Shown piece after piece: positions 24,924-44,808 of a DNA stretch of 64,000 nt. This DNA is from Schmidtea nova (Eukaryota). Location: NCBI GenBank assembly GCA_044892505.1, contig CM097882.1:100254001-100318000 (forward strand), given 5' to 3'. The stretch's first letter is position 1, and each line of letters begins with the position of its first letter. A program made the translations under genes and the position numbers. The notes beneath the pieces were generated by a model, which did no database searches, was not told where the DNA came from, and saw nothing but the letters and a program-made list of their open reading frames with translations.

Positions 24924-25882
24924 TGTTAAGGATACCTAAATAACAATTTACTAATAAATAAATAAAATTACCTGGGTGAAAATCGTCATGACGAATGAGA
25001 TGGCTAATGGGAACTCAGAAAAGAAAACGGAAATAAAAAGAAATGAAAAATGAGAAAGAAGAAGCAGACAAAAGGAAGCAGACAAGGAAACAAAAACAAA
25101 GGTCAACACTAATTAATTAGTACATAGGGAAAAGGAATTTCAAATCGGGAAAAAGAAAAATAATAACAGTATGCTTATCTCGACAGCTTGTCAGAGATAA
25201 CGGGAACAAAAACAAAACAGGCCGGAGCGGCAAAAAGTAAATACAAAGTAGCCGAGTTGCTAAAGGCAGCATGGGAGTTCTAAAGAAGTATGGGAAATTT
25301 CAGAAGCAGAAATGAAAAAAAAGCAAGTGGTCACGAGTGCCGAACTGTCCGGCGTAACATGGGAGTTGCGGGAGACAAACGAACGATGACAAACTATAAA
25401 AGGCGAAAGCAATCGGAACTGAATCAGAAGTAAAATTAGAGAAGAAAAATAGAAGTAGATTCGAAGAAGCAAATCGGAGAATCGGAGAAATAAAATTGAA
25501 GAAGTGAATTTGACAAAGAAACTAGTGAATTCGAGTGTAATTGATTAAAGGCGAGTGCGTTGAATTGGAAAACGATAAAAGATTAAATTGTGTGTGGAAA
25601 ACCGAGAGCGAAATAAACTAATTGAACAGAACAAAACATTTTGATTGAATAAAGAGTCGGAGCGGTTAACAAAGAATAAAGTCAAAGCGCGGAAACAATC
25701 GAAACCAAGTACCAGTATTAAATCAAATCAGTGGTTAGTAGTTGTTGTTTTCTAGGCAATATAAAAGTGAGCTATTCTTCACGAAGTGTCGTAATAAGCT
25801 CGTATAATTGTCAAAAGAGTTTATTGAATTGGTTGTGAAAATTAAATCGTGTAAATCAGTCTAATAATCAATAAAGTTTGTG

Positions 25883-28110
25883 AGTAGGTAGATGTGTGGA
25901 GTCAAACACAAAGAAATGAGTCATAATGCGTGGGCGGAAAATTTTAAACAAAGAACTTTTTTTTTCGGAACCCCCCCCGGGGGGGTCAATTTTTTTTTTT
26001 TTTTTTTTTTTCGCGCCAAAAATTTTTGAATTTTTTTTTTTGAAAATTTTTTTTTTCGCGCCAAATTTAAATTTGAAAATTTTTTAACACAAAATTTTTT
26101 AACACAAATTATTTTTTTTTTTAACACAAAATTTTTTAACACAAAATTTTTTAACACAAAATTTTTTAACACAAAATTTTTTAACACAAATTTTTTCAAC
26201 ACAAAATTTTTTAACACAAATTTTTTCAACACAAAATTTTTTAACACAAAATTTTTTTTTTTTTCACAAATTTTTTTTTTAAAAATTTTTTTTTTTTTTT
26301 AAACAAAGAACTTTTTTATGCGTGGGCGTTAAAAATTTAAACAAAGAACTTTTTAATGCGTGGGCGTAAAAAATTTTTAAACAAAGAACTTTTTCGAGGC
26401 CCCCCCGGGGGGGTCAATTTTTTTTTTTTTTTTTTTTCGCGCCAAAAATTTTTGAATTTTTTTTTTGAAAATTTTTTTTTTTCGCGCCAAATTTAAATTT
26501 GAAAAATTTTTAACACAAAATTTTTTAACACAAATTTTTTTTTTTTAACAAAATTTTTTAACACAAAATTTTTTAACACAAAATTTTTTAACACAAAATT
26601 TTTTAACACAAATTTTTTCAACACAAAATTTTTTAACACAAATTTTTTCAACACAAAATTTTTTAACACAAAATTTTTTAACACAAATTTTTTCAACACA
26701 AAATTTTTTAACACAAAATTTTTTAACACAAATTTTTTCAACACAAAATTTTTTAACACAAAATTTTTTTTTTTTTCACAAATTTTTTTTTTAAAAATTT
26801 TTTTTTTTTTTTAAACAAAGAACTTTTTTATGCGTGGGCGTTAAAAATTTAAACAAAGAACTTTTTAATGCGTGGGCGTAAAAAAATTTTTAAACAAAGA
26901 ACTTTTTCGAGGCCCCCCCGGGGGGGTCAATTTTTTTTTTTTTTTTTTTTTCGCGCCAAAAATTTTTGAATTTTTTTTTTGAAAATTTTTTTTTTTCGCG
27001 CCAAATTTAAATTTGAAAAATTTTTAACACAAAATTTTTTAACACAAATTTTTTTTTTTTAACACAAAATTTTTTAACACAAAATTTTTTAACACAAAAT
27101 TTTTTAACACAAAATTTTTTAACACAAATTTTTTCAACACAAAATTTTTTAACACAAAATTTTTTAACACAAATTTTTTCAACACAAAATTTTTTAACAC
27201 AAAATTTTTTAACACAAATTTTTTCAACACAAAATTTTTTAACACAAAATTTTTTTTTTTTTCACAAATTTTTTTTAAAAATTTTTTTTTTTTTTTAAAC
27301 AAAGAACTTTTTTATGCGTGGGCGTAAAAAATTTAAACAAAGAACTTTTTAATGCGTGGGCGTAAAAATTTTTAAACAAAGAACTTTTTCGAGACCCCCC
27401 CCCGGGGGGGGGCTAATTTTTTTTTTTTTTTTTTTTTTTCAAAAATTATTTTTTCGCGCCAAAAATTTTTAAAATTTTTAAAAATTTATTTTTTTTTCAA
27501 ATTTTTTTTTTCCCGCCAAATTTATTATTGTAAAATAATTTTTTTTTTTTACACAAATTTTTTACACAAATTTTTTAACATAAATAATTTTAACAGAAAT
27601 ATTAGTCATCGAAAAGTTTGCAACACGCGTGCAACTTAAACAAAGACAATGCAATACATGTGCAAGACTTTGCAACACGCGTGCAACTTAAACAAAGACA
27701 ATGCAATACACGTGCAACATGAACAAAGACATTGAAAATAAAATTTATTTATAAATATATCGTTGTGTACGTGTACAAAATTTAGTTTCAAAATTATTTA
27801 CATCTGGATTATTACTCGGAATATTATTATTCATAGGAATATTATTCATTGTAATATTATTCATCGGAATACTAGTATTTGTCGGAATATTATTCTTTGG
27901 AATATTTGAAATCTTCTCCAGCCGTATGGATGCCGATAACATCATTATAATTATTAATATAAATAAACTTATATAATGTAATACAATGGCTGTTTTTTCA
28001 TTTTCAACTGTTTGATTTTGGTATCTGACTTCATATTCTTTTTTAACAAAAGTTTGATTGATACATTTTAATCGTTCAACTATTTTCATCATTATTTTGG
28101 CAATCATTTT
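25883..28110 (+). repeat. Left TIR of the Polinton (2.23 kb, internal block present three times)
   Basis: Reverse complement of 43544-44808 except that the block of C/G palindrome, AACACAAAATTTTTT array and GCGTGGGCG units (about 430-510 bp) occurs three times. Confidence 0.92.
27745..28107 (-). CDS. TIR-borne copy of the C-terminal 120 aa of the membrane protein at 43325-43909
   Basis: Identical translation from MIAKIMM onward; the upstream frame stays open into an N-masked tract. Confidence 0.5.
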   Translation of the reverse strand: MIAKIMMKIVERLKCINQTFVKKEYEVRYQNQTVENEKTAIVLHYISLFILIIIMMLSASIRLEKISNIPKNNIPTNTSIPMNNITMNNIPMNNNIPSNNPDVNNFETKFCTRTQRYIYK

Positions 28111-28959
28111 AATAATATTANNNNNNNNNNNNNNNNNNNNNNNNNNNNNNNNNNNNNNNNNNNNNNNNNNNNNNNNNNNNNNNNNNNNNNNNNNNNNNNN
28201 NNNNNNNNNNNNNNNNNNNNNNNNNNNNNNNNNNNNNNNNNNNNNNNNNNNNNNNNNNNNNNNNNNNNNNNNNNNNNNNNNNNNNNNNNNNNNNNNNNNN
28301 NNNNNNNNNNNNNNNNNNNNNNNNNNNNNNNNNNNNNNNNNNNNNNNNNNNNNNNNNNNNNNNNNNATAATAACTTATAATNNNNNNNNNNNNNNNNNNN
28401 NNNNNNNNNNNNNNNNNNNNNNNNNNNNNNNNNNNNNNNNNNNNNNNNNNNNNNNNNNNNNNNNNNNNNNNNNNNNNNNNNNNNNNNNNNNNNNNNNNNN
28501 NNNNNNNNNNNNNNNNNNNNNNNNNNNNNNNNNNNNNNNNNNNNNNNNNNNNNNNNNNNNNNNNNNNNNNNNNNNNNNNNNNNNNNNNNNNNNNNNNNNN
28601 NNNNNNNNNNNNNNNNNNNNNNNNNNNNNNNNNNNNNNNNNNNNNNNNNNNNNNNNNNNNNNNNNNNNNNNNNNNNNNNNNNNNNNNNNNNNNNNNNNNN
28701 NNNNNNNNNNNNNNNNNNNNNNNNNNNNNNNNNNNNNNNNNNNNNNNNNNNNNNNNNNNNNNNNNNNNNNNNNNNNNNNNNNNNNNNNNNNNNNNNNNNN
28801 NNNTTATAATAATAATAATAACTTGTAATAAAAATATTCAACACATAAAAAATATTCAACACATTAAAAATATTGTCATAGTTTTTATTGATTGCGCAAT
28901 ATTATTAACAATCAAAAAATAAGGCCCTAAAGAGGACCATTATTTCATTCTCAATCTTT

Positions 28960-29400
28960 TTTCATATTTCTTTTCGGTTTTCATATTTCTTTTCGGTTTT
29001 CATATTTCTTTTCTGTTTATCTTTTCGGTTATCATATTTCTTTTCGGTTTTTCGTTTCGGTTTTCATATTTCTTTTTAGTTTTGATATTTCTTTTATGTA
29101 TGTTCTTTTCGGATTCTTTTCTGTTTTCATTTCAGTATTATTTTCTGTTTTCACAATCTGTTTTTCTGATTTCCTTTCTGTTTTCATAATAAATTTTAAC
29201 AATTGAATTTCCTTTCTGTTTTCTTAAATCTAAAATCTAAATTTTTAAAAACTGATTGTTACAATCAAAAATTGTGGCCCTGAAGAGGGCCGATTGTGCA
29301 TTCGCATATCTTTCTGGTTTTTTTTTTTGATTTTCTGTTTTTGGATTTTTTGATTTTTTTTTTTTTGATTTTCTCTTAATTTTTTTTTTCTTTCCATTTT
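28960..29400. repeat. Low-complexity 17-18 bp repeats (TCATATTTCTTTTCGGTT-like) downstream of pPolB
   Basis: Tandem degenerate copies visible from 28962. Confidence 0.7.
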
Positions 29401-29422
29401 CTTATAGATTTATATCTAGCCA

Positions 29423-29498
29423 TCATCGCAAATAATTATGCTCCGGCTCTTCGTAAAATAAATACGGATCATCTTGTAGCTGTTGTTGTAGCTGCTGC

Positions 29499-29532
<34 letters not shown>

Positions 29533-32500
29533 GCTGTTGTTCATTCTGAGGCTGCTCCGTATCTAAAATACTGTTACCCCCTCTATAATGGCCATATGCC
29601 AGGCTTTTATTTTTCCCTACCCAATTGCGCTTGTCATCTCTACAGCTTAATGCCCGCTTATTATTTTTCACACTAAAAAGCTGGTGATTTTTTGATGTTA
29701 TCCTAAACTGGGGGACCGTATAGATCTTATTATTTAAATAGCAATCGAGATACGACTGATGAGTTAGTCCAGTATCCTTCATGCATATCCCCTTAGCCTT
29801 CATACTTTCCTCATCACCCATTAAGCTGTAGCATTTCGGTCTAAGAAACACCCACTCTTTATACAACATCCCTTTACTCTCGTCTTTGAACTTTCCAATG
29901 ACAGAGTCAAGGTTTCTGTTGTATAAAGGATCCATAGGGTCATAATTAGAGGTGTCCAGCAAGCAATCATTAACCATAGCCGGTAAAAGAGTGTCAAGAC
30001 TACAGTTTTTGACCTCAAGAAAAAAGGAGTCAGTATCCCCAGCGACGATGTTAATCTTACAGTTGTAGTCGTCACGATATTTTTGTAACTCTACATACTG
30101 TAGCTGGTACATTCTTAGTTTGGATAAATCCAGTACAGTTTGACCGATGTAGCTGGGTCTATCCAAACATACTGACTCCTTTCGCAGCAAGACAGAAATA
30201 AGGTCATTATCGATTTTATTTGTTTTACGAAACGTAGGTTTCGAGCAATAAGTTATTAATTTTTCGGCATTATTACATAGTCGTAAATTAATACGTTTTT
30301 TTAAATTTTCAACAGTCTTGCCGTAAAGACTGTTGTTTAATAATTTATAAAAATCTCGATCTAATTTAGTTGTTGACGCCGATCGTAACGTCGTATTTGT
30401 GTTGATATAATTTAAAAAAATTTTATCTTGATTAAATTTTATGGCCCTGTGGACCTTTGTTATGACGATGCCTAATTTAAGAAATAGTTGCAGAAGCCGC
30501 CAATGAAGAACATAGTTCTTCTTTGGATTATGCGTGAGCATCAGCTTCTCAACCTTGGATCCCGGTGCACACATCTTTTCAGCGGCAACTGGAAGATCAT
30601 CCAGTTTGTCGTGAATTGATGCCGGTATCTCCAAATCCACTTCTATGGTGTAGCCATAATGAAGTGCATCTAGATCAACCGATGTGCACTGACAAACGAT
30701 TTCATTTAATAAGTGGTCATCTGTGACCCATTCAAAATTAGAACAAGGTAAAGGTTGGCTTAAGGCCCATCCATACAAGTTATTGATGTCTATGTAAAGC
30801 AATGAGGTATCCGGGCTTGTTTTTACATAGTGTTTGTTAATAAAAGTTAGTCCGCCACGGATACCGCCCTCGAAAAAATTGTACATTTCCATATCGGTGA
30901 GGAGCTCGATTGGAGATTCTAAGGTCATTAAGGCAGAACTCCAAGATAAACTTGGAATCCCGAGGAAATTCAGAGGTTCAAGTCTATTATGATTAATAGA
31001 CTTGAAACGAAATTGCTGGAAAAAATCAGCAAGTAAAAAAACGTCCAGTTTTAAATAAACCATCATGTAATCAAAAAGTGAATTACATGATGTTTCAATC
31101 CATATTCTTTGCGCCATTGCATATTCTTCTGGCTTTACATCTTTCCAGATCGGCGGGAGAGCTAAAGTAGAATGTAAAACTTCTAAGGAAGTTGCAGCAT
31201 CATAGGGAAAAATGCCCTTGGCTGTAATTATAGTGCCTTGAAATTCTGATTCGGTGAGTGGTAAGGAAGTAAGAGTTTTGACAGCATTATTTAAAGACTC
31301 GCTGACGAATTGGTATGAGTCTATGAATTTGACAGTTAAAGAGTCAATCCTAGCAAAAAGACTAAGAAATTTCTCACTTGTTAATGGAATACAGCTAATA
31401 TTCCATTTACGATATTTAGATAAACCATATTTTAGAATATGGTGTAGATCATACCCCTTTAAATTGTGAAAGATGACAGGAAGGGTATGTCTAATCTGCC
31501 TATTTTTATTACATTCTGAGCAAGCTGCTCCAAGAAAAAGACCGGTGAAATGGTCATGGTCCCTAACAGGTCGACATAATAGCTTTTTGCATAAATAACA
31601 AATTGTGCTGTTGTTAAATTCAATTTGTTGCTCATGGCTAATTATCATAGTTTTATTAGCGTTTTTATAATAGTACGGCGTTACTATGTGGCGACTTATA
31701 AGCTCTATTTCATTTAGAAAATCCTCTACACAATTAAGGCCTGCAAAAGATTTATAGGATTTTTGTCCAGTAAAGTTGTTAATTAATAACAAACCCGCAG
31801 AAATAGGCAAATGCTTTTGGAAATACCTGGTGTCCGCAGGTAAGATTGCCTCAAAGTCGGCATAAATAACAAAGGGAGGAGTCACTGTTTTGCGCCATTC
31901 AGTAAATTCCAGCATCTTATTTTTTGGTAAAGTGTACAAAGTTGTACCAGTTTGATTCTTATCACAAAGACCCCTATGCCTATTGAAAACCTCATCATTT
32001 CGAAAACCATTTAAGCACCTCGGACACCATTTACTACAAATCCTTACCGAAGTTATCGCGCTATTACGGCAATTCAAAAAACGATTCAAATCAAAGATGC
32101 CTATATAATGAAAAGTTTTTCTGTTTTGAAGTAATAACAGATTTATTGGGGTACCACCTACAACTTTTGACTTGTAAATTAAGTCAATAAAAGGATGTTT
32201 AAGGACAATATCCTCATTTTCATCAATAAGATCTAATAAGGGATTTTCATCATATGACAAAACATTGACGCTATAACCTGGGTTTTGTCTCTCAAATTTA
32301 CTTATATTACCAAGTCTCATAGGCATATCATTGGGGTCATAATTCAATTGTGAAAGATTATAAGAGGAAGGAATGCAACGAGTTTCATTTGTTAAACTGT
32401 CATATTTAATTATAGAAAGGAAACTATATAAAAAACAAAAGTTGTCCTGATTTACCACATTAACTAAACATTTCTTTTTCCTTAAAGATTTCGGAGTTTC

Positions 32501-34787
32501 GATAAACTGACTTCCGCTTAATCGAGTTATTTCAGAGTATCTGGTCAAGACAAAGCTAATGTATTCAACTTTTGAGATAGTCCAGTTACTACCTTTCTCA
32601 TTTATCGCGATGATTTTTTCATTTAAAAGAGCAATACCTTCCTCAATGAAGGTATCACTCCAGACCCTGGCAGAATTTGAGATAACGAACGATTGTAATT
32701 CATCGTCCTTCTCAAATTCCACCTTCAAACAGAATTGAATTTTAACAGTTTTATATTTGTTAACTTGAAAAGTTAATTTTTCTAAAAGAATTGTCGGTAC
32801 TGAGACCGTTTTCAAATTAAGATTTTCCACGTCCATTTTAACAATTATATGATTGTTATTTAGGTCATTGACGATTTCGACGGCACCATATCCGATTTGG
32901 TTATTATTTAAATTATTTAAATTATTTACATTATTATTTAAATTTTCATCATCACTGATGACTATTAATTCATCATCAGTGAGATCTATTATTTGAATTT
33001 TAGTAGGAACTGAATCCGGAATTTTAATATGTTTTCGTTTATTATTTGTATTATTTATATTATTGATATTATTTGTATTATTTATATTATTTGTTTGATT
33101 ATTATTTGTATTATTTATAGTATTATTTAGATTATTTGTATTATTTATAGTATTATTTAGATTATTGTTATTTATATTATTATTATTTATAGTATTATTT
33201 ATAGTATTATTTATAGGATTATTAATAAAATTAGGAAAAAGTTCCTTAAATAAAATTTTCTTAGACGGTTGAAACTGTGAAAGATGGCTACAGTGCCTAT
33301 TAAAGAAGTCTATATATGGGCAAATTTCGATAAGTTTACAGGTGGGGCATATGAGGTGGGTAACAGTATTATATGGCAACGAGTAGTATTTTTCCATAAT
33401 GATATGACAATCATTATGGAACCTACTGTTGCAAAAATTTTTGTAGGTTGAACCTGAATTTTAAAATAAAAAAATAATTAAATAAATTATCAATATAAAT
33501 AATGAAAATAAAAAATAATATAAAGTAAAATGGATATTTCATAATATAATTATATAACATAAATATCTTTATTGAAAAATCAAAATTTCATAATATAATT
33601 CTATTTCCTAAATGTTTTTATTGAAATATCAATATTTCATAATATAATTCTATTTCCTAAATGTTTTTATTGAAATATCAATATTTCATAATATAATGAT
33701 ATAACATAAATATTTTTTATTGAAAAGTAAAATAGACATTTCATAATATAATTCTATAAGATAAATGTTTTTTATTGAAAAGTAAAATGGATATTTCCTA
33801 ATATAATGGTATAAGATAAATGTTTTTTATTGAAAAGTAAAATGGATATTTCCTAATATAATGTTATAACATAAATGTTTTTTAGTGAAAATGGATATTT
33901 CATAATAAAATTCTAGTACATAAATGTCTTTTAACAAAAATTATAATTCATATTTCATAATATAATGCTATAACATAAATACTTTTTATTGAAAATGGAT
34001 ATTTCATAATATAATGGTATAACATAAATGTCTTTTAACAAAAATTATAATTCATATTTCATAATATAATGCTATAACATAAATACTTTTAATATTATAC
34101 TTTTAAATAATTTAGTAATTGTTTTTATAAACCATTACTAAATTATTTAAAAATAATATATTAAAAGTATTATTTATATTAAAAAGTTAAATTAAAAAAG
34201 TTAAATTATAAATCAATAATGATTAATACATACATTTGTTCTTCCCATAAATTGGGGCATCCAGATTAATAGGAGCATTTCTCGGGACGTCAGCAACTTT
34301 CGGGACGTCAGCAACTTTCGGGACATCATCATGATTCGGGACCTCATCGTCCATATCGACATTTCTCATAATATTCATATTATCTGAAACATTTATAATG
34401 AAATAATATTAATAAAATAAATAAATAAATTACAATTAGATCGTCCCATTGACGAAAATCCACCCATCCTTGATGTTGATGCTTCGGCATTGTTGTTGTT
34501 GTAGTTGTTACTATTATTAACTAAAGTAATAGTAAAATAATAATAAAAAATAATAATAAATATTACCCAAAAATCTAATCCCATTATTCTCATTAATACG
34601 AATCCTTGGAGCAACATTCATATCTATCGATTGATCGTCTTGTCCCATCATAACATGAGCGATATTTCGCGCTATATTCATTTCTGAAATAATAATAATA
34701 ATAATAAAAAATAAAAATAAAAATAATAAATTTACCATTTACACCTCCTGCGAGATGTCTTTCCTTTACGATTCGGATATTGTTCAT
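29423..34787 (-). CDS. polB: Protein-primed family B DNA polymerase with terminal-protein region; predicted five exons, 1478 aa (the single ORF 29423-33397 gives 1324 aa)
   Basis: Exo II FHNLKGYD, motif A YIDINNLYG, motif B KLLNNSLYGK, motif C GDTDS, HDHFTG..CN zinc insert, poly-Q tail. Predicted exons 34787-34736, 34683-34567, 34520-34434, 34383-34234 and 33453-29423 join in frame at GT-AG sites. The polymerase call is firm; the 5' exons are a prediction. Confidence 0.9.
33525..34110. repeat. Degenerate minisatellite of about 55-60 bp inside the predicted fourth polB intron
   Basis: About ten copies of ATATTTCATAATATAAT..TATAACATAAATG..TTTATTGAAAA. Confidence 0.85.
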
Positions 34788-34854
34788 AATTGTTTGATAT
34801 TAATTTAAAATTGATTTAAAAAATTTGTAAGTAAAAAGTGACGAAATAATGCAA

Positions 34855-35060
34855 GTATATACTATATAAAGATGAATTTTATTAACCGACCAATCAGAAT
34901 CGAGATAGGATAGGCAAATACATGCACACATACTGCACACACAATGTACCTTTGTTTATGTGTGTTTGACGTCACGATATTGCTTTGTATCGTGACAAAG
35001 ACATGATATGACGTGTTTCATCATGTGCTTATCACGCACTGATCACGCACTGGTCATGTC
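34855..35060 (-). promoter_or_regulatory. Predicted promoter of the spliced polB gene
   Basis: TATA-like 34855-34870, CCAAT box 34890-34894, CRE TGACGTCA 34967-34974, ACAAAGACA 34995-35003. Confidence 0.55.
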
Positions 35061-35148
35061 TTTATGATTAAAATAATAATATTTAATATTAATAATAATA
35101 AAAATAATAATATTTTAAAAAATAATAATAAAAAATAATAAAATACAT

Positions 35149-35550
35149 TTATTGCTTTAAATAATCTACAACAGCAGACAAGCACCCTTTATAGGCACAC
35201 ATACAATGGTCTTTATAGGGACATGAAATGTTTTCAGGAACATATTCAACTTCTTTATAAGTATATTTGATTAATCTTAATTTCGGGAAATACTTCTTCA
35301 AAACATACATCTTTTCATTATCGGTAACATAGAAAATAGCTCCTTTATCTGTGATATCATCCATTATACATTTTGGGCAAAAATAATCTTGTCCTTCAAA
35401 CGATTCTATACGATCAGGCCATAAAGATAAATCACTGTATATATAATACTGGGGTGTGAAAATATTATTAACATTCATAATACATAATTCCTTAATTGTT
35501 GTTCCACCCATTTCATTATAACCATAAAAATCGATAAAATAACAAGACAT
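35149..35550 (-). CDS. 133-aa protein resembling small DEDD/DnaQ exonuclease-like Polinton ORFs (probably non-catalytic)
   Basis: YFIDFYGY...IKELCI N-terminus, FYVTDNEK..LKKY and a C-terminal Cys/His cluster CPYKDHCMCA; recognised from memory of motifs only. Confidence 0.5.
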   Translation of the reverse strand: MSCYFIDFYGYNEMGGTTIKELCIMNVNNIFTPQYYIYSDLSLWPDRIESFEGQDYFCPKCIMDDITDKGAIFYVTDNEKMYVLKKYFPKLRLIKYTYKEVEYVPENISCPYKDHCMCAYKGCLSAVVDYLKQ

Positions 35551-35582
35551 TTTTTCAAATAAAATATATTAAAATAAATTGT

Positions 35583-35960
35583 TTATAACATTGATTTTAA
35601 CCATGCAAGGCAATGTTCACCACAAGTGATTGTTAAAGGATGCTGATATCGAATTCTATTATACACAATAGGTTTACCAATAGTTTGAAGTTTTCGAACA
35701 AGTAAATTCGGATAATAATATCCAAAGGGATCAAATACATGTATTCGATCTGGTTTCACATAAACTGCAATCCAATGTTCACCGCCCAACGTAGATGTCT
35801 GAGTATTTACAATGATGGCTTGATTCATTTTCAAATAAGGTATTTTATCCAGAGGAAATACTCCAATAAATTGATTTCCCAATAGTTTTTTACCTTGATG
35901 TCATACCTGAATAGAACTAATTAAAAATAAATAACTAATCAAATAAAAATCTTACTCCAT
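35583..35960 (-). CDS. Adenain-like cysteine protease (49-nt intron 35907-35955; one-base frame discrepancy at 35886-35891)
   Basis: Catalytic His (GEHWIAVY), Asp (FDPFG), Gln and Cys (YQHPLTITCGEHC); ATGGA|GTAAG...TTCAG junction. Confidence 0.9.
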
Positions 35961-36034
35961 GATGATAATAATAATAATAATAATAATAACTTTGGTCATT
36001 TATACTGTTTAAACCAATAATGTTTGAGCTCTGC

Positions 36035-37255
36035 TCAAACTAATATTGTTCGATTGGCAGTAATTTGTACTTCATTTTCAAAAACTCCATATATAATTAC
36101 ATGAACCGGTTCATCAATGGGTTTTGCAAACTTTATATCGAGTCGTAAATTCCCGTTTTGAGGGATTTGGCTTTGATTCAAATCGAAATCGGGAGCGAGC
36201 ACAAATGTAAAGAATGGATATTTACTTTTAAATTCATCCAGACTTATACCACAATTCAAGTTTTTATCCAAATATCCTAGATTTCGGACAAGACTTTGCA
36301 TATATGTGGCACTAAAATTATCATTTTCAAAATCTTGAGTATAAGTTTCTCGAAAATCGGTATTTTTCGATAACGATAATGAAGTCACATTGAAATGTTT
36401 GAATGTAGATGCAGATTCAGCATATGATCCATTATATTGATTTTCAGTTTGAAAAGCCACAAGAATGAAATTAGGCATTCTTCTATCTCCAAATATTTGC
36501 TCCTTGTAAAATGACGATGCCCCTTTACCGATTGCAAACGATACGATTTCTTTAGATTTTAATGGATAAATTGCATGTTTACTATTTAAACCAATTTGAT
36601 GACCGGCCAAAACTGAAGATTCACATCGAACTCTTCTTACCATTAATTTTGCATCAACTATTTGGATTATAGGTTTCCCAGCTGCAGATTTCAATGATAA
36701 TGAAGATTCAGATCTCTTCAATCTAATATGTACATTAACTCCGGGAAGTAAGTATTTTGGTTGATCCATAAAATCGAGTTGTAATGATGAACACATGTTG
36801 AAAAGTTTAGATCCCTTGATCCATTTTTTCCGATCGTCAGATGAACCATATCCCATTGGAGTAAGACATGTTTCTTTTGTATCGCTAGTATAATTTAAAA
36901 CAGTTTCGATTATGGCCTTGTGTGCATATGTATTGTTTCCACCCTCGATTTTTATATTATTAAATCCAAGAATCGCATCTTTGAAAAGAGTATGAAATAG
37001 GTAATTATTAGGCACTACATCACTCGCATCAACTAATTTATTTTTATCTTTATCTAGAACCTTGACAGTAACGAATAATAAAGTATCGTTCAAATCCAAA
37101 TATTCGGTTGCCGATCCATTAATGTAAAATTCAACATTATTTCTACTATCTGTAATAGAATTCATTGGAAAAACATCTTCAAACACCCCATATTCAATAA
37201 CTGCTTGAGGTGATGGTCGATCAAAAAGACATAATTCAGATTTACCGCAAATCAT
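36035..37255 (-). CDS. Double jelly-roll major capsid protein (hexon-like), 406 aa
   Basis: CGKSELCLF..P.Q N-terminus, EYLDLNDTLLFV, NNYLFHTLFKD, KYLLPGVNVHIRL, GNLRLDIKF, typical of Polinton major capsids. Confidence 0.9.
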   Translation of the reverse strand: MICGKSELCLFDRPSPQAVIEYGVFEDVFPMNSITDSRNNVEFYINGSATEYLDLNDTLLFVTVKVLDKDKNKLVDASDVVPNNYLFHTLFKDAILGFNNIKIEGGNNTYAHKAIIETVLNYTSDTKETCLTPMGYGSSDDRKKWIKGSKLFNMCSSLQLDFMDQPKYLLPGVNVHIRLKRSESSLSLKSAAGKPIIQIVDAKLMVRRVRCESSVLAGHQIGLNSKHAIYPLKSKEIVSFAIGKGASSFYKEQIFGDRRMPNFILVAFQTENQYNGSYAESASTFKHFNVTSLSLSKNTDFRETYTQDFENDNFSATYMQSLVRNLGYLDKNLNCGISLDEFKSKYPFFTFVLAPDFDLNQSQIPQNGNLRLDIKFAKPIDEPVHVIIYGVFENEVQITANRTILV

Positions 37256-37617
37256 TCTTCAAATATAGTTCCATGACCTTTCATTCGTTTGTTTATACGT
37301 TTTCTAATCTTTTTACGTCTTGGTCCTACCGGTTCAGGTTGCGGTTCGTTTTTGGAAAACATATTTGAAATTGACGGTATCGCCTTGGATACAGCCTCCA
37401 TAGCATTCGTTTTCAATGTAGGCAAAATTTTCTGATCTTTCATTATAACGTCTTTAGCAGTTTTCATTCCAAAACTGCCCAGTCGCTTAAGTAGTGGAAG
37501 TGCAAATCTTCCAATAGTTTTCAACCAACCTGATCCATACTGTTTACCTATAAAATACGGTAATTCGCCACCAGTTTGGCTATTACTGTACAATGAAATT
37601 ATATCGGGATTACTCAT
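37252..37617 (-). CDS. Small virion core / membrane-active precursor protein, 121 aa
   Basis: QTGG and QYGSG protease-site motifs followed by an amphipathic helix WLKTIGRFALPLLKRLG; basic C-terminus; ATGA overlap with the capsid gene. Confidence 0.75.
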   Translation of the reverse strand: MSNPDIISLYSNSQTGGELPYFIGKQYGSGWLKTIGRFALPLLKRLGSFGMKTAKDVIMKDQKILPTLKTNAMEAVSKAIPSISNMFSKNEPQPEPVGPRRKKIRKRINKRMKGHGTIFEE

Positions 37618-38662
37618 GATGTTTTCGAAAATGTAGAGTCAAATGAGTTTTTGAATTTTTTGGAAAGTTTATTAAATTACCTCTATCATCTCGGATATTT
37701 ATTTCTATATTGTTTATACAGGATGTTGAAACAGATAAATACATTGGATTTTCAACTTGTATTTGAACAACCTCATCCTGTTCATATTTTTCAATCCATA
37801 CAGATTTCAACATGGGAACTAATGAATCACCGACAATTATAGGATTGACTATATTACTGTAAATGAACATTTGCTGATGAAGTTTAATTATTTTTGGTTT
37901 ATATATTCCAACAGTGAAGCTTCCGTCTTGAGCATATGTAGCTTTCGCTAATCCCAATGTTTTTACAAGGTTATTGTCAAAAGTTATTTCGCTAACATCT
38001 GCATTCAAACTGAATTTGAAGTAACTATCATCTACCAATTCCAGAGATTTAAAAATACTTGCACAATTTAGAATAAAATATGATTGCAATTCATCCAGTT
38101 TCGATATGTATAAATTATCGGTAAATGTATGTATAAATGCAGAATCAGCCTTGTACTCCATCTTTATTCTAATTTTTTCCGTTAATGGACCATCTATACC
38201 ATAATATGGTAACGGTATCTTGTATGTATCTGTAGGACTTACAATACTCTGTTTCGTTAATCCCATTCTTTTTGCCATTGCCAAAGTATCAAAAGTTATA
38301 GTGAAGGGAAAATTATCACAGGTAAAATAAATAGAATGTCTATCGCTACTGATTTGAGCAATATCATCGGCAGGATTAGATATATCAACTTCACAAAATT
38401 GATTGTTGATAATCAAATTTTTATATTTTGTATGTAAAGTTTTCTTTTTGTACCGAATTTCTGATTTACTGTAAAATGGAAATGGATTATACACAAATGT
38501 AAAGTCTAAGAGAGCGACTTCCCAAATCCCGTCCAAATACATTGGATTTTGGAGATTGACCATGAAATTACTGGAAGTATTATCTGGATGTATATCTGGA
38601 CAACTGTTGCTAGGTAGAATCATATAAAAATTCATTTTACTAGGTTTTTTGATGATATCCAT
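37610..38662 (-). CDS. Minor capsid protein (penton-like); likely start at Met10 (38635)
   Basis: FYMILPSNS..HPDNTSSNF..L..P..L.G.WEVAL N-terminus and MFIYSNIV.P.IVGD..VPML C-terminus, typical of Polinton minor capsids. Confidence 0.88.
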   Translation of the reverse strand: MDIIKKPSKMNFYMILPSNSCPDIHPDNTSSNFMVNLQNPMYLDGIWEVALLDFTFVYNPFPFYSKSEIRYKKKTLHTKYKNLIINNQFCEVDISNPADDIAQISSDRHSIYFTCDNFPFTITFDTLAMAKRMGLTKQSIVSPTDTYKIPLPYYGIDGPLTEKIRIKMEYKADSAFIHTFTDNLYISKLDELQSYFILNCASIFKSLELVDDSYFKFSLNADVSEITFDNNLVKTLGLAKATYAQDGSFTVGIYKPKIIKLHQQMFIYSNIVNPIIVGDSLVPMLKSVWIEKYEQDEVVQIQVENPMYLSVSTSCINNIEINIRDDRGNLINFPKNSKTHLTLHFRKHHE

Positions 38663-39678
38663 GATGGTTCTTTATATCCATGCCACTTTACATAGTATTG
38701 TTTATCCTTACCCACCATTTTAGATTTCAGGATTTTTTGAATTCTAAATATTGTCGGTGGAGGAATAACTTGTAATTCTTGTTCGTAGAATTTCCCACTG
38801 ATTATATTGTTATCAGAGTCACAAATAGTATACATGACAGGATTCTGCACTGTGTTGACTTTCGATATTTGATATACCTCATCACTCCAATTATTATCAA
38901 AATTTTTAATGAATGGCGATGCACTAATCTTGCTAATTCGAACATGATCACCAATTTTATATTTTGGTTTCTTTACTTTTACTTCACTCACAATATTTTC
39001 AGTATCAACTACTTCTGCCGGTTTCCTGTCATTTATACCCCGATGAGCACTATGATTATAACTATGAATCAATTGAGGTAAAACATTAATCCAGGTTTTA
39101 TTGCCTTTAAAAACAAAGTATTTTTTCAATCGATCACGCAAAGTTCGATTAAATCTCTCGACATGAGCGGCTTTGAATTGCGAGAATACCGAATAATGAT
39201 TTATTCCCTTGATAACTTCCTTGACTTTACTGTTGTAAAATTCCTTTCCTAAAAAATATTAAAAATGTATAAATTTAAATTAAAATTTACCCAAATCGGT
39301 TTGTAAATTAGTTGGCCGATCCTTTTTCATCATTGTCTTGATAGCGATTGCCATGTCATTAGCTGATTTCGATTTTACTCCAATTGCTCGAGCAAATCTA
39401 CTGTAAACATCAATACATGTTAAAATATACTTGTACCCCTTGTTAATAGCGGAATACGGAATCATTTCCATCAAATCCATTTGCCACAAATCATTGATTC
39501 TATATGTTTTATATGCTCGAGTTGGAAACCGTTTCAACATCGGTTTGTTTAGACTGTATGCAAGTTGCCCCGATAACCAACTTTGTGTCTGTTGTTTCGA
39601 CTTCTGTGCTTTTTTCCTTAGCTTTTCGACTCCACCGAAACCGGCGTCGTCTTTTGGGTTCGTCCAGATCTTCTCCAT
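38632..39678 (-). CDS. int: Retroviral-like (rve) integrase with C-terminal chromodomain, two exons, 334 aa
   Basis: WQMDL, spliced LQTDLG|KEFYN, AAHVERFNRTLR, chromodomain IQKIL..YYVKWHGY; exons 39678-39291 and 39248-38632 total 1005 nt. Confidence 0.92.
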
Positions 39679-39733
39679 TACAACAAGAAGATTTAAAGTT
39701 TAAATTTAAATTAGGTAATGATTGACCCATTGT

Positions 39734-40279
39734 TTATGACCTTTGTCCCAATAAACCAGCACCTCCCAATAATGATAAAGCTAGTGGTAATAATGCGGCA
39801 ATAAATCCTCCTTGTTGTTTATATATTATTTTTCGCATAAGTTTTCGATTTTTTGTTTTTACTAGCGACAACAATGGTTTCTTATGCTTGTTCAAAACAC
39901 GTCGATTAGATGGACTGAGATGCATTTTACCTCGTACTACTTTAATTAAAATAGTGAGTAAATCATCGATAACGTAATTAGGAAACGATTGAAGAATACC
40001 CATTCTTCTAGCGGATGGGGCTTTAAGCAATGCATTAAAAAACGGAAAACTCCGATGATGTACTTGTTTAGCATTTGATTTCAAATTAATTGGAATTTGA
40101 TTTTGTTTGGGAAAATTATCCATAATTAGTTTTTTCGATGGTGTATAACTTGTTTTTGAAACTGATTTTGAAACGGATTTCTTTGTCGATTTCTTTCTTC
40201 GACCTGCTTTCTTACCTATTTTCATTGATTTTCGAGCTTTTATCAATCGTTCAAACTTTACTCGAGATTTCATTAACAT
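39734..40279 (-). CDS. Basic core protein with adenovirus pX-like C-terminus, 181 aa
   Basis: K/R/S-rich N-terminus; QQGG|FIAALLPLALSLLGG resembles the pX MRGG|ILPLLIPLI motif. Confidence 0.75.
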   Translation of the reverse strand: MLMKSRVKFERLIKARKSMKIGKKAGRRKKSTKKSVSKSVSKTSYTPSKKLIMDNFPKQNQIPINLKSNAKQVHHRSFPFFNALLKAPSARRMGILQSFPNYVIDDLLTILIKVVRGKMHLSPSNRRVLNKHKKPLLSLVKTKNRKLMRKIIYKQQGGFIAALLPLALSLLGGAGLLGQRS

Positions 40280-40299
40280 TATTATTACTGTAAATCAAT

Positions 40300-40923
40300 T
40301 TAACTTTGTTTATAAACCATGGCTCCTTCCTTGTTAAAAATATCAGTTCTAACCCTTAAATCATCACTGCATTGTTGAGTAAAATCCAAGAAAATATATC
40401 CATGAGGAGATTTTGTAGCATCCTGAAAGGCTTCAATCAAAAAGTTACGATTTGAAGGATAAGCTTGTCTTGCCAGAAAATCAATAACTGTTGCATCTCT
40501 AGGATTTTTAAAAACAACAAGATATTGAACATTTAAATTACGAGTTCGATGACTACCGCCCTGATGAAATAAATTCTGAGTTATAAAAATAACAGTAACA
40601 CCTTTATGTCTACTGATTTTCGTAAATAAATTATTAAAATCCTTTTCTTTATTTGCTTCTTGATACAAATCGTCAATGATAATCACATCACCTTGTTTTA
40701 ATCTAGATGACCAGTTTTTATCGAAACCTTTTATGATTGTCATTTTTATTTTACAAAACTGATCTTGTGTCATTCCACTTTCGTCGTCAGCACCCCTATG
40801 CCAATAAATATTATTAAATTTCGACTTGAATAATTTCGATTGCAATAATTTACAAACAAATAAAGTTTTTCCACTCCCGCTCGGACCAACAATTTGAAAC
40901 ACTGCATCATTTCTTAATTCCAT
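40300..40923 (-). CDS. A32/FtsK-like genome packaging ATPase, 207 aa
   Basis: Walker A GPSGSGKT, Walker B IIIDD, ISRH and ITQ motifs. Confidence 0.93.
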   Translation of the reverse strand: MELRNDAVFQIVGPSGSGKTLFVCKLLQSKLFKSKFNNIYWHRGADDESGMTQDQFCKIKMTIIKGFDKNWSSRLKQGDVIIIDDLYQEANKEKDFNNLFTKISRHKGVTVIFITQNLFHQGGSHRTRNLNVQYLVVFKNPRDATVIDFLARQAYPSNRNFLIEAFQDATKSPHGYIFLDFTQQCSDDLRVRTDIFNKEGAMVYKQS

Positions 40924-41016
40924 ATTTAAAATTTATATTTTCTTAATATTATTGATTATATTTGTTTTAAATACATGTTCTCAAAGTAATTATTTCATTT
41001 AAAAATATTTTCAGTA

Positions 41017-41484
41017 ATGATTAGAAACATTAATTACAAGGGTAAGACAGATGTATCACACATGAAATTTCCAAAAGGTAAACCCCAGCAAATTGTAGAT
41101 CGAACTGGAAAATATCCCATAATATACTTTAAAACAGGAAGATATAGAATAATGGGATGCAGGGAATTTATTAGTGAGGAACAAGTTGAGTTTTACGATT
41201 TAAAGATACAATCGATAACTGTAACTGCGGATTTAGGATTTATTTGTAATTTGAATGAATTATCTAAATTGATACCGTGTGTTTACGAGCCAGAATTATT
41301 TCCAGCTTTGAGGTATACCAAATATAATCCCATGTGTGTAAACATATTTCCAAGTGGGAAATTAGTCATATTAGGATTAAAAAACAAAGACTATAGTACT
41401 ATAGTTGATGATATTATTTACGATATAAAATCAATTATAGAAGATAAAGCCTTTGTTGATTTCATACTAACATGTGACTCATGA
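41017..41484 (+). CDS. TATA-binding-protein-like protein, 155 aa
   Basis: YEPELFPALRY and NIFPSGKLVILG match TBP repeat 2 (YEPELFPGLIY, LIFVSGKIVLTG); IRNINYKG..IYFKTGRYRIMG matches repeat 1. Confidence 0.82.
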   Translation: MIRNINYKGKTDVSHMKFPKGKPQQIVDRTGKYPIIYFKTGRYRIMGCREFISEEQVEFYDLKIQSITVTADLGFICNLNELSKLIPCVYEPELFPALRYTKYNPMCVNIFPSGKLVILGLKNKDYSTIVDDIIYDIKSIIEDKAFVDFILTCDS

Positions 41485-41509
41485 CTGCAATATCGATGCA
41501 TTAGAAATG

Positions 41510-41625
41510 CACGATTCTGATTGGCTCTGTGTGTATCGATAGAATAAAGACATGTTGTGCATGCTTCATTCTGATTGGTTCATTGTGTGTGTTTGAAATC
41601 ATGTGTGTTTCTTTGATATATATAC
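41510..41625 (+). promoter_or_regulatory. Predicted promoter: two inverted CCAAT boxes and TATA
   Basis: CTGATTGG ending at 41524 and 41578; TATATATA 41617-41624; CGATTCTGATTGG is shared exactly with the polB promoter. Confidence 0.55.
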
Positions 41626-41659
41626 TATGAACAATCTCACATAGTTTATATTCACAATT

Positions 41660-42295
41660 ATGTATCTTACGCAAACTTTAATTAAAAGCCGTAAGGGTTT
41701 TAATTTTTAATTTTTCATATTTAATATTATTTTAGAAAAACTAATGAACGTTATCTATCGAAAGCTGGAGGAGCTATTCCCGAACCTGATGCCGGCTCTC
41801 GTCTACACGGCTCCGGAGATGTTCCCATATAAAATTATGGTCCTGACTGGTATCGATATAAACCAGATTGTGCTCGACCACATGACGAGCCAGAATACAG
41901 ATCTCCCAATGGTACCCGAACACATTATGTGCGCATATCAATGCGGAAGTTGTGTTGAAAGAATACGACAATTCAACATCTGGGTTTTGCGAAACTCGTT
42001 GAAATTATTCGATGTCCAGCAAATGGATAAAATCGATGAGGAGGAAGAAGAGCAAATCAAGGAAACCTGGCCCAACTCTACTCCGGAGCCGATTGATGCC
42101 GATGATCAATCAAAAAATGATTGCTCAATGGAACATGCACCATCTCTAGATGGCCCGTATCCATCGGAATCACCTGATTGTTCAGAATCTCCACAATCAC
42201 CTGATTGTGCAGAATGCCATCGACAGGCTGATGGTGTTGAAGAAGAGGAGGAAGAAGAAGAAGAAGAAAAAGAAAAAGAAAACGACGAACAATAA
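41660..42295 (+). CDS. Hypothetical protein with CxxC and acidic tail; two exons (45-nt intron 41691-41735)
   Basis: ATG at 41660, donor C|GTAAGG and acceptor TTTAG|AA join in frame to ORF 41744-42295; poly-Glu C-terminus; a homologous relic at 49170-49400. Confidence 0.7.
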
Positions 42296-42841
42296 TTTGA
42301 TTTGCATGTTTAATGTATTTAGTTTTTTTTTATTCTTTTAGTTATGTCATTTTTGTTATTTTAGTATAATAAAAGATTTTTAATTATTTTAGTTTTTTAT
42401 TCATTTTAGTTTTTGTTTTCATTTATTTAAATAATAGTAATAGTTTTTTTTTTATTAAAACATTTTTAATAGTAGTAATTTTTATTAACTAAATATATAT
42501 CAAGTTAATAGTTTTTTATTAAATACTAATTAATATGAAAGTGTTTTATGAAAGATAATAATTTGTGAAATAAATAAATAAATAAATAAATAACAACATT
42601 AGTAGCAGAACATTGTGATCAGAACCCTGGAAGCAGAATCTCTTCTGTGATGGTTTTGATATACAAAAAACTTCATACTAAACATATACTAAATAATTTA
42701 ACATGCACGCATACAACAAAGACATTGCAATACATGTGCATAGTGTGTGCAAAACGAATGCATGAATATGATTGGACAAAGACATCTAGTCATCAGTATA
42801 AATACAAAGACATTTTATAAAATATTGTCACAATTTATAAA

Positions 42842-43258
42842 ATGAATTCAAGAAAACAAAATTTAGATATAAGCGAAGAAAAAATATATCAGACTGAGGT
42901 AAAACCAGTCCAGATGTACTACGACAGCCGACTTTATTTTTTGGTTAATGAAATACCGTATCGATTATCATTTCCGGTAAAGTTAACAAAATCTTTATAT
43001 GACAGTCTTGCTGTAATTATTGCCAAGGAAGATATTATCGCATTAAATAGATTATTTTCAAAGATGAATGTTAATTTGACATGTAAAGAAACCATGTACA
43101 TCAATAACAGAAAAACTCGGTTTCATGATGCGTTTCAAACAATTGATTTCATGGATCAAGAACATTGGTTCGTTACCGTTATTATTCAAGGGTACAAGAT
43201 TGATAAAAAAGATGTTGTTACTCCAATTTGGAGAGTTGACAATGCAAGATATGCATAA
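42842..43258 (+). CDS. Hypothetical 138-aa protein, possibly an OB-fold ssDNA-binding protein
   Basis: Intact ORF with CCAAT and TATA upstream; beta-strand-like C-terminus VTVIIQGYKIDKKDVVTPIWRV. The function is a guess. Confidence 0.6.
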   Translation: MNSRKQNLDISEEKIYQTEVKPVQMYYDSRLYFLVNEIPYRLSFPVKLTKSLYDSLAVIIAKEDIIALNRLFSKMNVNLTCKETMYINNRKTRFHDAFQTIDFMDQEHWFVTVIIQGYKIDKKDVVTPIWRVDNARYA

Positions 43259-43324
43259 TTGTTTTTTAATAAATATTTTTTAGTATGAACAATTTTAGTT
43301 TTGATATTAGTTTTTGTTTTTAAA

Positions 43325-43909
43325 ATGAAATTAATTATAGTTATTTTATTATTATGTGTTCACAATACTGAAGGAGAACAAGCTTTGGAAGATTGTCAAT
43401 CATCCCATCCGTTTCGAAAACAAGATAGTACTTGTGCGAGTTATAATGATATATGTCTTTACTCAAACCTTGAATGCAGTCAAATAAAATTACAATGTAA
43501 TCAATGTCCTTCCAAAAATAATGTGATTAATAATGACATTGAAAAAATGATTGCCAAAATAATGATGAAAATAGTTGAACGATTAAAATGTATCAATCAA
43601 ACTTTTGTTAAAAAAGAATATGAAGTCAGATACCAAAATCAAACAGTTGAAAATGAAAAAACAGCCATTGTATTACATTATATAAGTTTATTTATATTAA
43701 TAATTATAATGATGTTATCGGCATCCATACGGCTGGAGAAGATTTCAAATATTCCAAAGAATAATATTCCGACAAATACTAGTATTCCGATGAATAATAT
43801 TACAATGAATAATATTCCTATGAATAATAATATTCCGAGTAATAATCCAGATGTAAATAATTTTGAAACTAAATTTTGTACACGTACACAACGATATATT
43901 TATAAATAA
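43325..43909 (+). CDS. Predicted type I membrane protein (signal peptide, six-Cys ectodomain, TM, NNIPM-repeat tail)
   Basis: MKLIIVILLLCVHNTEG signal-like start, Cys-rich segment, TM AIVLHYISLFILIIIMMLSASI. Confidence 0.72.
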   Translation: MKLIIVILLLCVHNTEGEQALEDCQSSHPFRKQDSTCASYNDICLYSNLECSQIKLQCNQCPSKNNVINNDIEKMIAKIMMKIVERLKCINQTFVKKEYEVRYQNQTVENEKTAIVLHYISLFILIIIMMLSASIRLEKISNIPKNNIPTNTSIPMNNITMNNIPMNNNIPSNNPDVNNFETKFCTRTQRYIYK

Positions 43910-44808
43910 ATTTTATTTTCAATGTCTTTGTTCATGTTGCACGTGTATTGCATTGTCTTTGTTTAAGTTGCACGCGTGTTGCAAAGTCTTGCACATGTAT
44001 TGCATTGTCTTTGTTTAAGTTGCACGCGTGTTGCAAACTTTTCGATGACTAATATTTCTGTTAAAATTATTTATGTTAAAAAATTTGTGTAAAAAATTTG
44101 TGTAAAAAAAAAAAATTATTTTACAATAATAAATTTGGCGGGAAAAAAAAATTTGAAAAAAAAATAAATTTTTAAAAATTTTAAAAATTTTTGGCGCGAA
44201 AAAATAATTTTTGAAAAAAAAAAAAAAAAAAAAAAATTAGCCCCCCCCGGGGGAGGGGGTCTCGAAAAAGTTCTTTGTTTAAAAATTTTTTACGCCCACG
44301 CATTAAAAAGTTCTTTGTTTAAAAAAAAAAAAAAATTTTTTAAAAAAAATTTGTGAAAAAAAAAAAAATTTTGTGTTAAAAAATTTTGTGTTGAAAAAAT
44401 TTGTGTTAAAAAATTTTGTGTTAAAAAATTTTGTGTTGAAAAAATTTGTGTTAAAAAATTTTGTGTTAAAAAATTTTGTGTTGAAAAAATTTGTGTTAAA
44501 AAATTTTGTGTTGAAAAAATTTGTGTTAAAAAATTTTGTGTTAAAAAATATTGTGTTAAAAAATTTTGTGTTAAAAAAAAAAAAATTTGTGTTAAAAAAT
44601 TTTGTGTTAAAAAATTTTCAAATTTAAATTTGGCGCGAAAAAAAAAATTTTCAAAAAAAAAAATTCAAAAATTTTTGGCGCGAAAAAAAAAAAAAAAAAA
44701 TTGACCCCCCCCCCGGGGGGGTTCCGAAAAAAAAGTTCTTTGTTTAAAATTTTCCGCCCACGCATTATGACTCATTTCTTTGTGTTTGACTCCACACATC
44801 TACCTACT
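43544..44808 (-). repeat. Right TIR of the Polinton (1,265 bp)
   Basis: Reverse complement of the left end; inner boundary lies inside the membrane-protein gene. Confidence 0.92.

What the first reader, a model, noticed from the sequence alone, without database searches (positions are those of the whole stretch)
33454..34787. Hidden five-exon polymerase gene with four phase-1 introns and symmetric exons
Seen: three small ORF fragments join in frame through GT-AG introns of 52 nt (34684-34735), 46 nt (34521-34566) and 50 nt (34384-34433). A GTATGT donor at 34233 joins a pyrimidine-rich TTCAG acceptor at 33454 (780-nt intron), in frame with pPolB and stop-free, completing a Cys/His-rich segment (CSTYKNFCNSRFHNDCH). 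The internal exons are 117, 87 and 150 nt, all multiples of 3, so any can be skipped in frame. Retaining intron 4 ends a 138-aa protein at 34223. Inference: host splicing chooses between a small protein and a 1478-aa polymerase, gating replication by cell type.
Basis: partly seen in the sequence, partly recalled or inferred. Interest (0 to 1): 0.9.

Follow-up and report, generated by a model that had tools for sequence, protein, structure and literature searches.

The report
Spliced polymerase gene in a Maverick element
A complete Maverick/Polinton virus-like transposon in an AT-rich animal genome carries short introns, and its DNA polymerase gene probably starts in four small upstream exons; this corrects the annotation but shows no regulatory switch.

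Summary
Every sequence fact in the finding checks out: the ATG at 34787, three GT-AG introns of 52, 46 and 50 nt, and a 780-nt GT-AG interval from 34233 to 33454. The exons are 52/117/87/150 nt and all four introns are phase 1. Retention gives 138 aa and the full join gives 1478 aa.

Introns 1-3 are well supported. Exons are 35-42% GC against 6-10% for the introns, and the chance of such a stop-free in-frame arrangement is about 1e-6. The same element's integrase has a 42-nt phase-1 intron that splits its catalytic core.

Intron 4 has only indirect support. The 18 codons between the acceptor and the polymerase's first ATG align to the first half of a Cys/His domain that lies inside a distant relative's polymerase. 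The frame is closed just upstream and holds no ATG, so an upstream exon is needed. Exon 4 is the nearest candidate in the right phase, and its gene has one of the element's two recognisable promoter modules.

No transcript evidence and no DNA of sister copies could be obtained. The idea of cell-type gating by alternative splicing has no support. Spliced genes in such elements, and spliced adenovirus polymerase mRNAs, are already known. Confidence in the five-exon gene is about 0.55.

The parts
25883..44808 (.). Complete Maverick/Polinton element, 18,926 bp including two N runs (28121-28366 and 28382-28803, left as they are). Termini are AG...CT.
   Evidence: Terminal inverted repeats; exact termini and flanks; gene content.
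25877..25882 (.). Left copy of the 6-bp target site duplication TTTGTG. The right copy is at 44809-44814.
25883..28110 (.). Left terminal inverted repeat, expanded by a 15-nt tandem array.
43544..44808 (.). Right terminal inverted repeat. The inner 747 nt are 96% complementary to the left arm.
34862..34942 (-). Promoter-like module upstream of exon 1: GTGTGTGCA-N7-TGCATG (34921-34942), GATTGG (34890-34895) and TATATAG (34862-34868). The only other copy in the window lies upstream of the ORF at 42842 (+).
34736..34787 (-). Exon 1, starting at the ATG at 34787; 52 nt.
34684..34735 (-). Intron 1: 52 nt, GT-AG, phase 1, GC 6%.
34567..34683 (-). Exon 2, 117 nt.
34521..34566 (-). Intron 2: 46 nt, GT-AG, phase 1, GC 9%.
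34434..34520 (-). Exon 3, 87 nt.
34384..34433 (-). Intron 3: 50 nt, GT-AG, phase 1, GC 10%.
34234..34383 (-). Exon 4, 150 nt, holding an 18-nt coding tandem repeat.
33454..34233 (-). Proposed intron 4: 780 nt, GTATGT...TTCAG, phase 1, GC 13%. It holds a 55-nt tandem array of 10.8 copies at 33522-34084. If it is retained, the frame stops at 34223-34225.
   Evidence: The splice itself is inferred, not shown.
29423..33453 (-). Exon 5: the protein-primed family B DNA polymerase body, with its first in-frame ATG at 33397 and the stop codon at 29423-29425. It is one uninterrupted reading frame.
33272..33453 (-). N-terminal Cys/His domain of the polymerase. Its first half lies upstream of the ATG at 33397 and its second half forms a beta-beta-alpha finger.
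38632..39678 (-). Integrase gene (rve core plus chromodomain), split by a 42-nt phase-1 GT-AG intron at 39249-39290. This served as the internal control for splicing in this element.
35583..35900 (-). Adenain-like cysteine protease ORF (PF00770).
40300..40923 (-). A32-like packaging ATPase.

Best explanation
The window holds a complete, young Maverick/Polinton element at 25883-44808 whose genes carry short AT-rich spliceosomal introns. Its protein-primed DNA polymerase is most likely one five-exon gene. Transcription starts downstream of the CCAAT/TATA-type promoter module at about 34862-34942. Four small exons (34787-34234) encode a low-complexity N-terminal leader. A 780-nt intron holding a tandem repeat is removed between 34233 and 33454, which joins the leader in frame to the polymerase body. 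The split junction codon gives the first Cys of an N-terminal Cys/His zinc-binding-type domain.

Shown: introns 1-3, the integrase intron, and that the pre-ATG segment is coding.
Inferred: that exon 4 is the partner of the 33454 acceptor.
Not supported: any regulated choice between isoforms.
For: 1. Splicing occurs in this element. The integrase core is cut at rve profile position 75 of 102 by an ORF end. A 42-nt, 7%-GC GT-AG interval joins it in phase 1 to an ORF with the rest of the core and a chromodomain.
2. Introns 1-3 are supported by composition, frame and codon usage.
3. The 18 codons upstream of the ATG at 33397 align to positions 99-109 and 36-47 of relative P0006. These sit immediately N-terminal to, and collinear with, the two copies of the domain that align to the post-ATG part. 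BLASTP over the whole domain gives E 6e-07. The 18 residues alone give E 0.003, and 3 of 5000 shuffles reach the score. P0006 is only 41-45% identical overall, so an untranslated stretch would not have kept this similarity.
4. The frame is closed by a stop 7 nt upstream of the acceptor and has no ATG before 33397. Of the three AG dinucleotides in the open stretch, only 33454 suits a phase-1 donor (read).
5. Both P0006 domain copies have a further Cys four residues upstream of the aligned Cys. In the window only the split codon supplies a Cys there.
6. The promoter module occurs exactly twice in the window, upstream of exon 1 and upstream of another element gene, and none precedes the polymerase.
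7. GC jumps from 13% to 30% exactly at the acceptor.
8. An out-of-frame ATG at 33414 lies between the acceptor and 33397. It would hamper initiation at 33397 on an mRNA starting upstream of it.
Against: - There is no transcript evidence.
- Intron 4 is 15 times longer than the other four introns, has a different donor (GTATGT against GTAA) and holds 7 AATAAA motifs.
- Relative P0026 starts MEKYY, aligned exactly to the Met at 33397, and that Met has A at -3 and G at +4, so a polymerase starting there is credible.
- The pre-ATG codons show no codon-usage signal.
- Exons 1-4 have no homologue among 153 relatives or in Pfam. No long protein shares the N-terminal segment in the 5.8-billion-protein search.
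- Six other phase-compatible mini-exons exist in the 780 nt, all with weak donors.
- Only three or four relatives carry the N-terminal domain at all.
Confidence: 0.55

Rival explanations
1. There are two separate genes. The four-exon unit ends at the stop at 34223 and makes a 138-aa low-complexity protein. The polymerase is translated from the ATG at 33397 on its own mRNA. That mRNA would start from a promoter in the AT-rich repeat region, or be formed by spliced-leader trans-splicing at the 33454 acceptor as in an operon. The pre-ATG similarity would then be a very recently disused remnant.
For: P0026 begins at the aligned Met. The Met at 33397 has a strong initiation context. Other genes of the element are packed operon-like with T-rich AG sites before them. 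AATAAA motifs follow the small gene's stop, and TATA-like strings abound in the 780 nt. The pre-ATG codons have no codon-usage signal.
Against: The pre-ATG segment keeps all ligand-type residues and matches a 41-45%-identical relative as well as the translated part does. An out-of-frame ATG at 33414 precedes 33397. No copy of the element's promoter module lies before the polymerase. No spliced-leader RNA gene or other host marker was found in the window.
Confidence: 0.27
2. The polymerase is spliced to an upstream coding exon, but not in the way proposed. Either a mini-exon inside the 780-nt interval is used, or the donor of exon 1, 2 or 3 is used directly; all of these are phase 1.
For: The acceptor and the need for an upstream exon are supported. 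Six ATG-to-phase-1-GT mini-exons exist in the interval. All upstream donors are phase-compatible.
Against: The mini-exon donors are weak (GTTAAA, GTATTT, GTCTAT, GTTATA) and lie in 13%-GC repeat DNA with no coding signal. Among the proposed exon ends, only exons 3 and 4 end in T and so supply the Cys seen at that place in P0006.
Confidence: 0.13
3. The small ORF pieces and their joins are chance in AT-rich DNA and no gene exists upstream of the polymerase.
For: There are no homologues and no domain for exons 1-4, and the sequence is low-complexity.
Against: Joint chance is about 1e-6. GC alternates sharply between exon and intron. Codon usage fits the frame. A promoter module shared with another element gene lies upstream.
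Confidence: 0.03

Closest known systems
Maverick/Polinton self-synthesising virus-like transposons
   Same: It has a protein-primed family B polymerase, an rve integrase, an adenain-like protease, an A32-like ATPase, long terminal inverted repeats, a 6-bp target duplication and AG...CT termini. General features are as in PMC10748475 and, from my own knowledge, Kapitonov & Jurka 2006 and Pritham et al. 2007.
   Different: The polymerase has an N-terminal Cys/His domain found in only a few relatives and probably four small 5' exons. The element also encodes a TBP-like protein.
Adenovirus E2B expression of preterminal protein and DNA polymerase
   Same: A protein-primed polymerase of a related virus lineage is made from mRNAs in which shared short 5' exons are spliced over a long distance to the terminal coding exon (PMC11304566). 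From my own knowledge, the start codon there lies in a small upstream exon.
   Different: Here the upstream exons would add about 154 residues of coding sequence rather than a leader plus a few codons. No second protein shares the exons. No transcript data exist.
Introns and introners inside Maverick-Polinton-like proviruses of dinoflagellates
   Same: Spliceosomal introns sit inside genes of full-length elements (10.1101/2025.03.18.643946).
   Different: Those are transposon-derived introners. The introns here are 42-52 nt and AT-rich, in the style of the candidate short introns in the host flanks, and show no repeat family.
Polinton polymerases with an inserted HNH-type nuclease (pPolB2 of nematodes and oomycetes)
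   Same: A weak Endonuclease VII/HNH-type Cys/His motif lies between the exonuclease motifs. PMC10748475 describes such insertions.
   Different: I did not test whether this polymerase belongs to that clade. The Pfam hit for the window's own protein is below the curated cut-off.

Membership tests
Maverick/Polinton element | Protein-primed family B DNA polymerase | tested here: met
   There are 16,790 relatives. 7 of 29 aligned relatives, plus P0026 and P0096, hit PF03175 above its cut-off. Exonuclease and polymerase motifs are visible. The window's own protein does not reach PF03175.
Maverick/Polinton element | Retroviral-type (rve) integrase | tested here: met
   PF00665 at E 2.6e-08 above its cut-off, plus a chromodomain.
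Maverick/Polinton element | Long terminal inverted repeats and a 6-bp target site duplication | tested here: met
   Terminal repeats from 25883 and to 44808; TTTGTG on both flanks.
Maverick/Polinton element | Adenain-like protease and packaging ATPase | tested here: met
   PF00770 at E 4e-06; PF04665 at E 5.3e-07.
Maverick/Polinton element | Double and single jelly-roll capsid proteins | not tested
   The ORFs at 36035-37255 and 37610-38662 have no Pfam hit. No structure was predicted for them.
Spliceosomal intron (interval 33454-34233) | GT...AG ends, T-rich tract before the AG, and a frame kept across the join | tested here: met
Spliceosomal intron (interval 33454-34233) | Coding sequence on both sides that needs the join | tested here: met
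   The downstream side aligns to an internal domain of P0006 and has no start codon. The upstream side is a spliced coding gene. That these two sides are partners is inferred.
Spliceosomal intron (interval 33454-34233) | Junction present in transcripts | not testable with these tools
   No expression data are available.
Spliceosomal intron (interval 33454-34233) | Splice sites conserved in related copies | not tested
   Sequence alone cannot show this. The early stop in the retained intron is expected by chance in AT-rich DNA.

The most novel reading that the evidence does not exclude
The long, repeat-filled intron 4, which carries polyadenylation-type motifs in its 55-nt units, acts as a decision point. 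Cleavage or retention would give only the 138-aa leader protein, and full splicing would give the polymerase. Replication of the element would then depend on host RNA processing, as a Maverick counterpart of adenovirus E2B control.
Probability: 0.12. Interest if true: 0.55.

Novelty: new member of a known kind. Interest (0 to 1): 0.3.

Why it matters
ORF-based annotation of Maverick/Polinton polymerases may cut off their true N-termini. Here the first half of a Cys/His domain lies upstream of the first ATG, and two relatives' called proteins also begin in the middle of that domain. If the five-exon model holds, polymerase expression in this element depends on host splicing from a promoter 1.4 kb upstream. 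That matters for reading which copies are expressible and for comparing these elements with adenoviruses. It is a refinement of annotation, not a new mechanism.

Tried and rejected
Searches that found nothing useful:
- Pfam on exons 2, 3 and 4 and on the N-terminal 77 and 557 residues: nothing.
- Word-indexed protein search with polymerase residues 1-78: no hit. With P0006 residues 1-165: only itself.
- Each exon peptide searched on its own against 153 relatives: nothing below E 0.3.
- Exact look-up of ten window proteins: none in the collection, so no source gene model or host name. Cluster look-up of relatives gave no names.
- Rfam and tRNA scans of the window: nothing, so no host marker or spliced-leader gene.
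- PDB sequence searches with the polymerase, a 29-row profile and both integrase exons: no useful hit.
- BLAST of intron 4 and the small gene against the window: only low-complexity matches; the 55-nt array is unique.
- Six-frame scan of 33380-35000 with the domain profile: no second copy of the domain (the top row is circular because the window's own unit was in the profile).

Results too weak to use:
- AlphaFold2 of the 77-residue N-terminus with a 4-row alignment gave mean pLDDT 55.8, so I ran no fold search.
- An exon-duplication origin for the phase-1 run: exons 2 and 4 open alike, but the similarity is not significant, with 179 of 2000 shuffles reaching it.

Steps not taken:
The junction codon and total lengths come from coordinates and from reading.

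One control was mislabelled: its 'frame+2' is the true frame.

Full report
**What is there.** The window is AT-rich (about 20-42% GC). It carries an animal-type rhodopsin-family receptor ORF, a MULE transposase and a Ty3/gypsy pol. I take it for an invertebrate animal genome, not human.

Between 25883 and 44808 lies a complete Maverick/Polinton element of 18,926 bp. It has long terminal inverted repeats whose inner 747 nt are 96% complementary, AG...CT termini and a 6-bp target duplication, TTTGTG. Its genes are:
- a 1324-codon uninterrupted polymerase ORF at 29423-33397 on the minus strand;
- an rve integrase with a chromodomain;
- an A32-like ATPase;
- a TBP-like protein;
- an adenain-like protease.

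The polymerase's own Pfam hit is only a weak Endonuclease VII motif. It nevertheless has 16,790 relatives, of which 7 of 29 aligned ones, plus P0026 and P0096, hit PF03175. Two N runs lie inside the element at 28121-28803. I left them alone, and the 'ORFs' listed across them are artefacts.

Exons 1-4 and introns 1-3 are much more than chance:
- GC alternates between 35-42% in exons and 6-10% in introns.
- The stop-free, in-frame arrangement has a chance of about 1e-6.
- Codon usage fits the proposed frame for exons 2 and 4.
- Upstream of exon 1 lies a promoter-like module of GTGTGTGCA-N7-TGCATG, GATTGG and a TATA box. Its 22-nt core occurs exactly twice in the window; the other copy is upstream of the element gene at 42842.

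**An internal control.** The integrase core domain is cut by an ORF end at rve profile position 75 of 102. The next ORF holds the C-terminal part of the core and the chromodomain. Between them lies a 42-nt GT-AG interval of 7% GC that joins the two in phase 1. Genes of this element therefore do carry short spliceosomal introns.

**Intron 4.** By itself the in-frame join is weak evidence:
- It is a 1-in-3 event.
- Six other phase-compatible mini-exons lie inside the 780 nt.
- The 18 pre-ATG codons have no codon-usage signal.
- Intron 4 is 15 times longer than the others. It holds a 55-nt tandem array and 7 AATAAA motifs against 4.0 in shuffles.

The informative result came from the exhaustive protein search followed by local comparisons.
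- Relative P0006 (with its cluster mate P0154) is 41-45% identical to the window's polymerase. It carries two internal copies of a Cys/His domain.
- The window's N-terminus aligns to both copies (E 6e-07 and 4e-05).
- The alignment runs through the Met at 33397 into the pre-ATG codons. The window's FCNSRFHNDC aligns to YCQSKSHQDC and to CESHNHNKC.
- The 18 pre-ATG residues alone give E 0.003, and 3 of 5000 shuffles reach the score. Their hits fall exactly where collinearity predicts.

At that divergence an untranslated stretch would not keep this similarity. The segment is therefore coding, or was until very recently.

The frame is closed by a stop 7 nt upstream of the AG at 33454 and has no ATG before 33397, so an upstream exon is required. 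Only that AG suits a phase-1 donor. Both P0006 copies have a further Cys four residues upstream. In the window only the split codon T|GT supplies a Cys there, with a spacing of six rather than four. The polymerase has no copy of the promoter module of its own.

**Against the model.** P0026 begins MEKYY, aligned exactly to the Met at 33397, and that Met has a good initiation context. P0026 is an ORF call, however, so its true start is unknown. P0006's called start also falls in the middle of a domain unit. Exons 1-4 have no homologue anywhere I could look.

**Weighing.**

| Explanation | Confidence |
|---|---|
| Polymerase coding sequence continues upstream through the 33454 acceptor | about 0.7 |
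| Complete five-exon model | about 0.55 |
| Separate genes, with own promoter or trans-splicing | about 0.27 |
| A different upstream exon | about 0.13 |

A stop three codons into a retained AT-rich intron is what chance gives.

**Compared with what is known.** Spliced genes in Maverick-Polinton-like elements are on record (10.1101/2025.03.18.643946). In adenoviruses the preterminal protein and the polymerase are made from mRNAs that share 5' exons spliced to distant coding exons (PMC11304566). This locus works like that, but with a coding leader. I file it as a new member of a known kind.

**Limits and rules.**
- I left out scans of public DNA collections for relatives.
I sent no joined exon sequence to any tool.
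The small profile was used only to search proteins and window pieces already held.

- While looking at the protease ORF I worked out frame-boundary positions in my reasoning. They are not repeated here. I state only that this ORF has no ATG before its conserved N-terminal motif and that I found no simple splice model for it.

Noticed in passing
window 41017-41484 (+): The element encodes a 155-aa protein with a TATA-binding-protein repeat (PF00352, E 6.7e-14). A library search for Polinton together with TATA-binding protein found no paper describing this.
   Followed up: partly
window 34921-34942 (-) and 42743-42764 (+): A 22-nt motif GTGTGTGCA-N7-TGCATG, followed by GATTGG and a TATA box, occurs exactly twice in the window. 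Both copies lie upstream of element genes, which suggests a shared promoter module.
   Followed up: partly
window 33454-34735 and 39249-39290 (-): All five introns seen in the element are phase 1. Roughly 0.2-1% would be expected from usual phase frequencies (my own knowledge). An exon-duplication origin was not significant.
   Followed up: partly
window 33522-34084: A 55-nt tandem array of 10.8 copies at 79% match is unique in the window. Each unit carries an AATAAA-like string on the minus strand.
   Followed up: partly
window 35583-35900 (-): The adenain-like protease ORF (PF00770, E 4e-06) has no ATG before its conserved N-terminal motif. A short GT-AG candidate interval lies just upstream, but I found no simple in-frame model.
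   Followed up: partly
window 43325-43909 (+) and 27745-28107 (-): This ORF has a signal-peptide-like start, a Cys-rich region and a hydrophobic segment, and it runs into the right terminal repeat. Its 3' part is mirrored in the left repeat.
   Followed up: no
window 33272-33453 (-); proteins P0006, P0154, P0026, P0096: An N-terminal Cys/His domain is not in Pfam and is present in only a few of 153 polymerase relatives. It occurs in two full copies plus a partial third in P0006. The called starts of P0006 and P0026 fall inside a domain unit.
   Followed up: yes
window 28121-28366 and 28382-28803: Two N runs lie inside the element next to the left terminal repeat. ORFs listed across them (28058-28862) are artefacts. 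Six further N runs lie in the flanks.
   Followed up: yes
window 57892-61719 (-), 14512-16380 (+), 12471-13733 (-): The flanks hold an uninterrupted Ty3/gypsy pol ORF, a MULE transposase ORF and an intronless rhodopsin-family receptor ORF.
   Followed up: no
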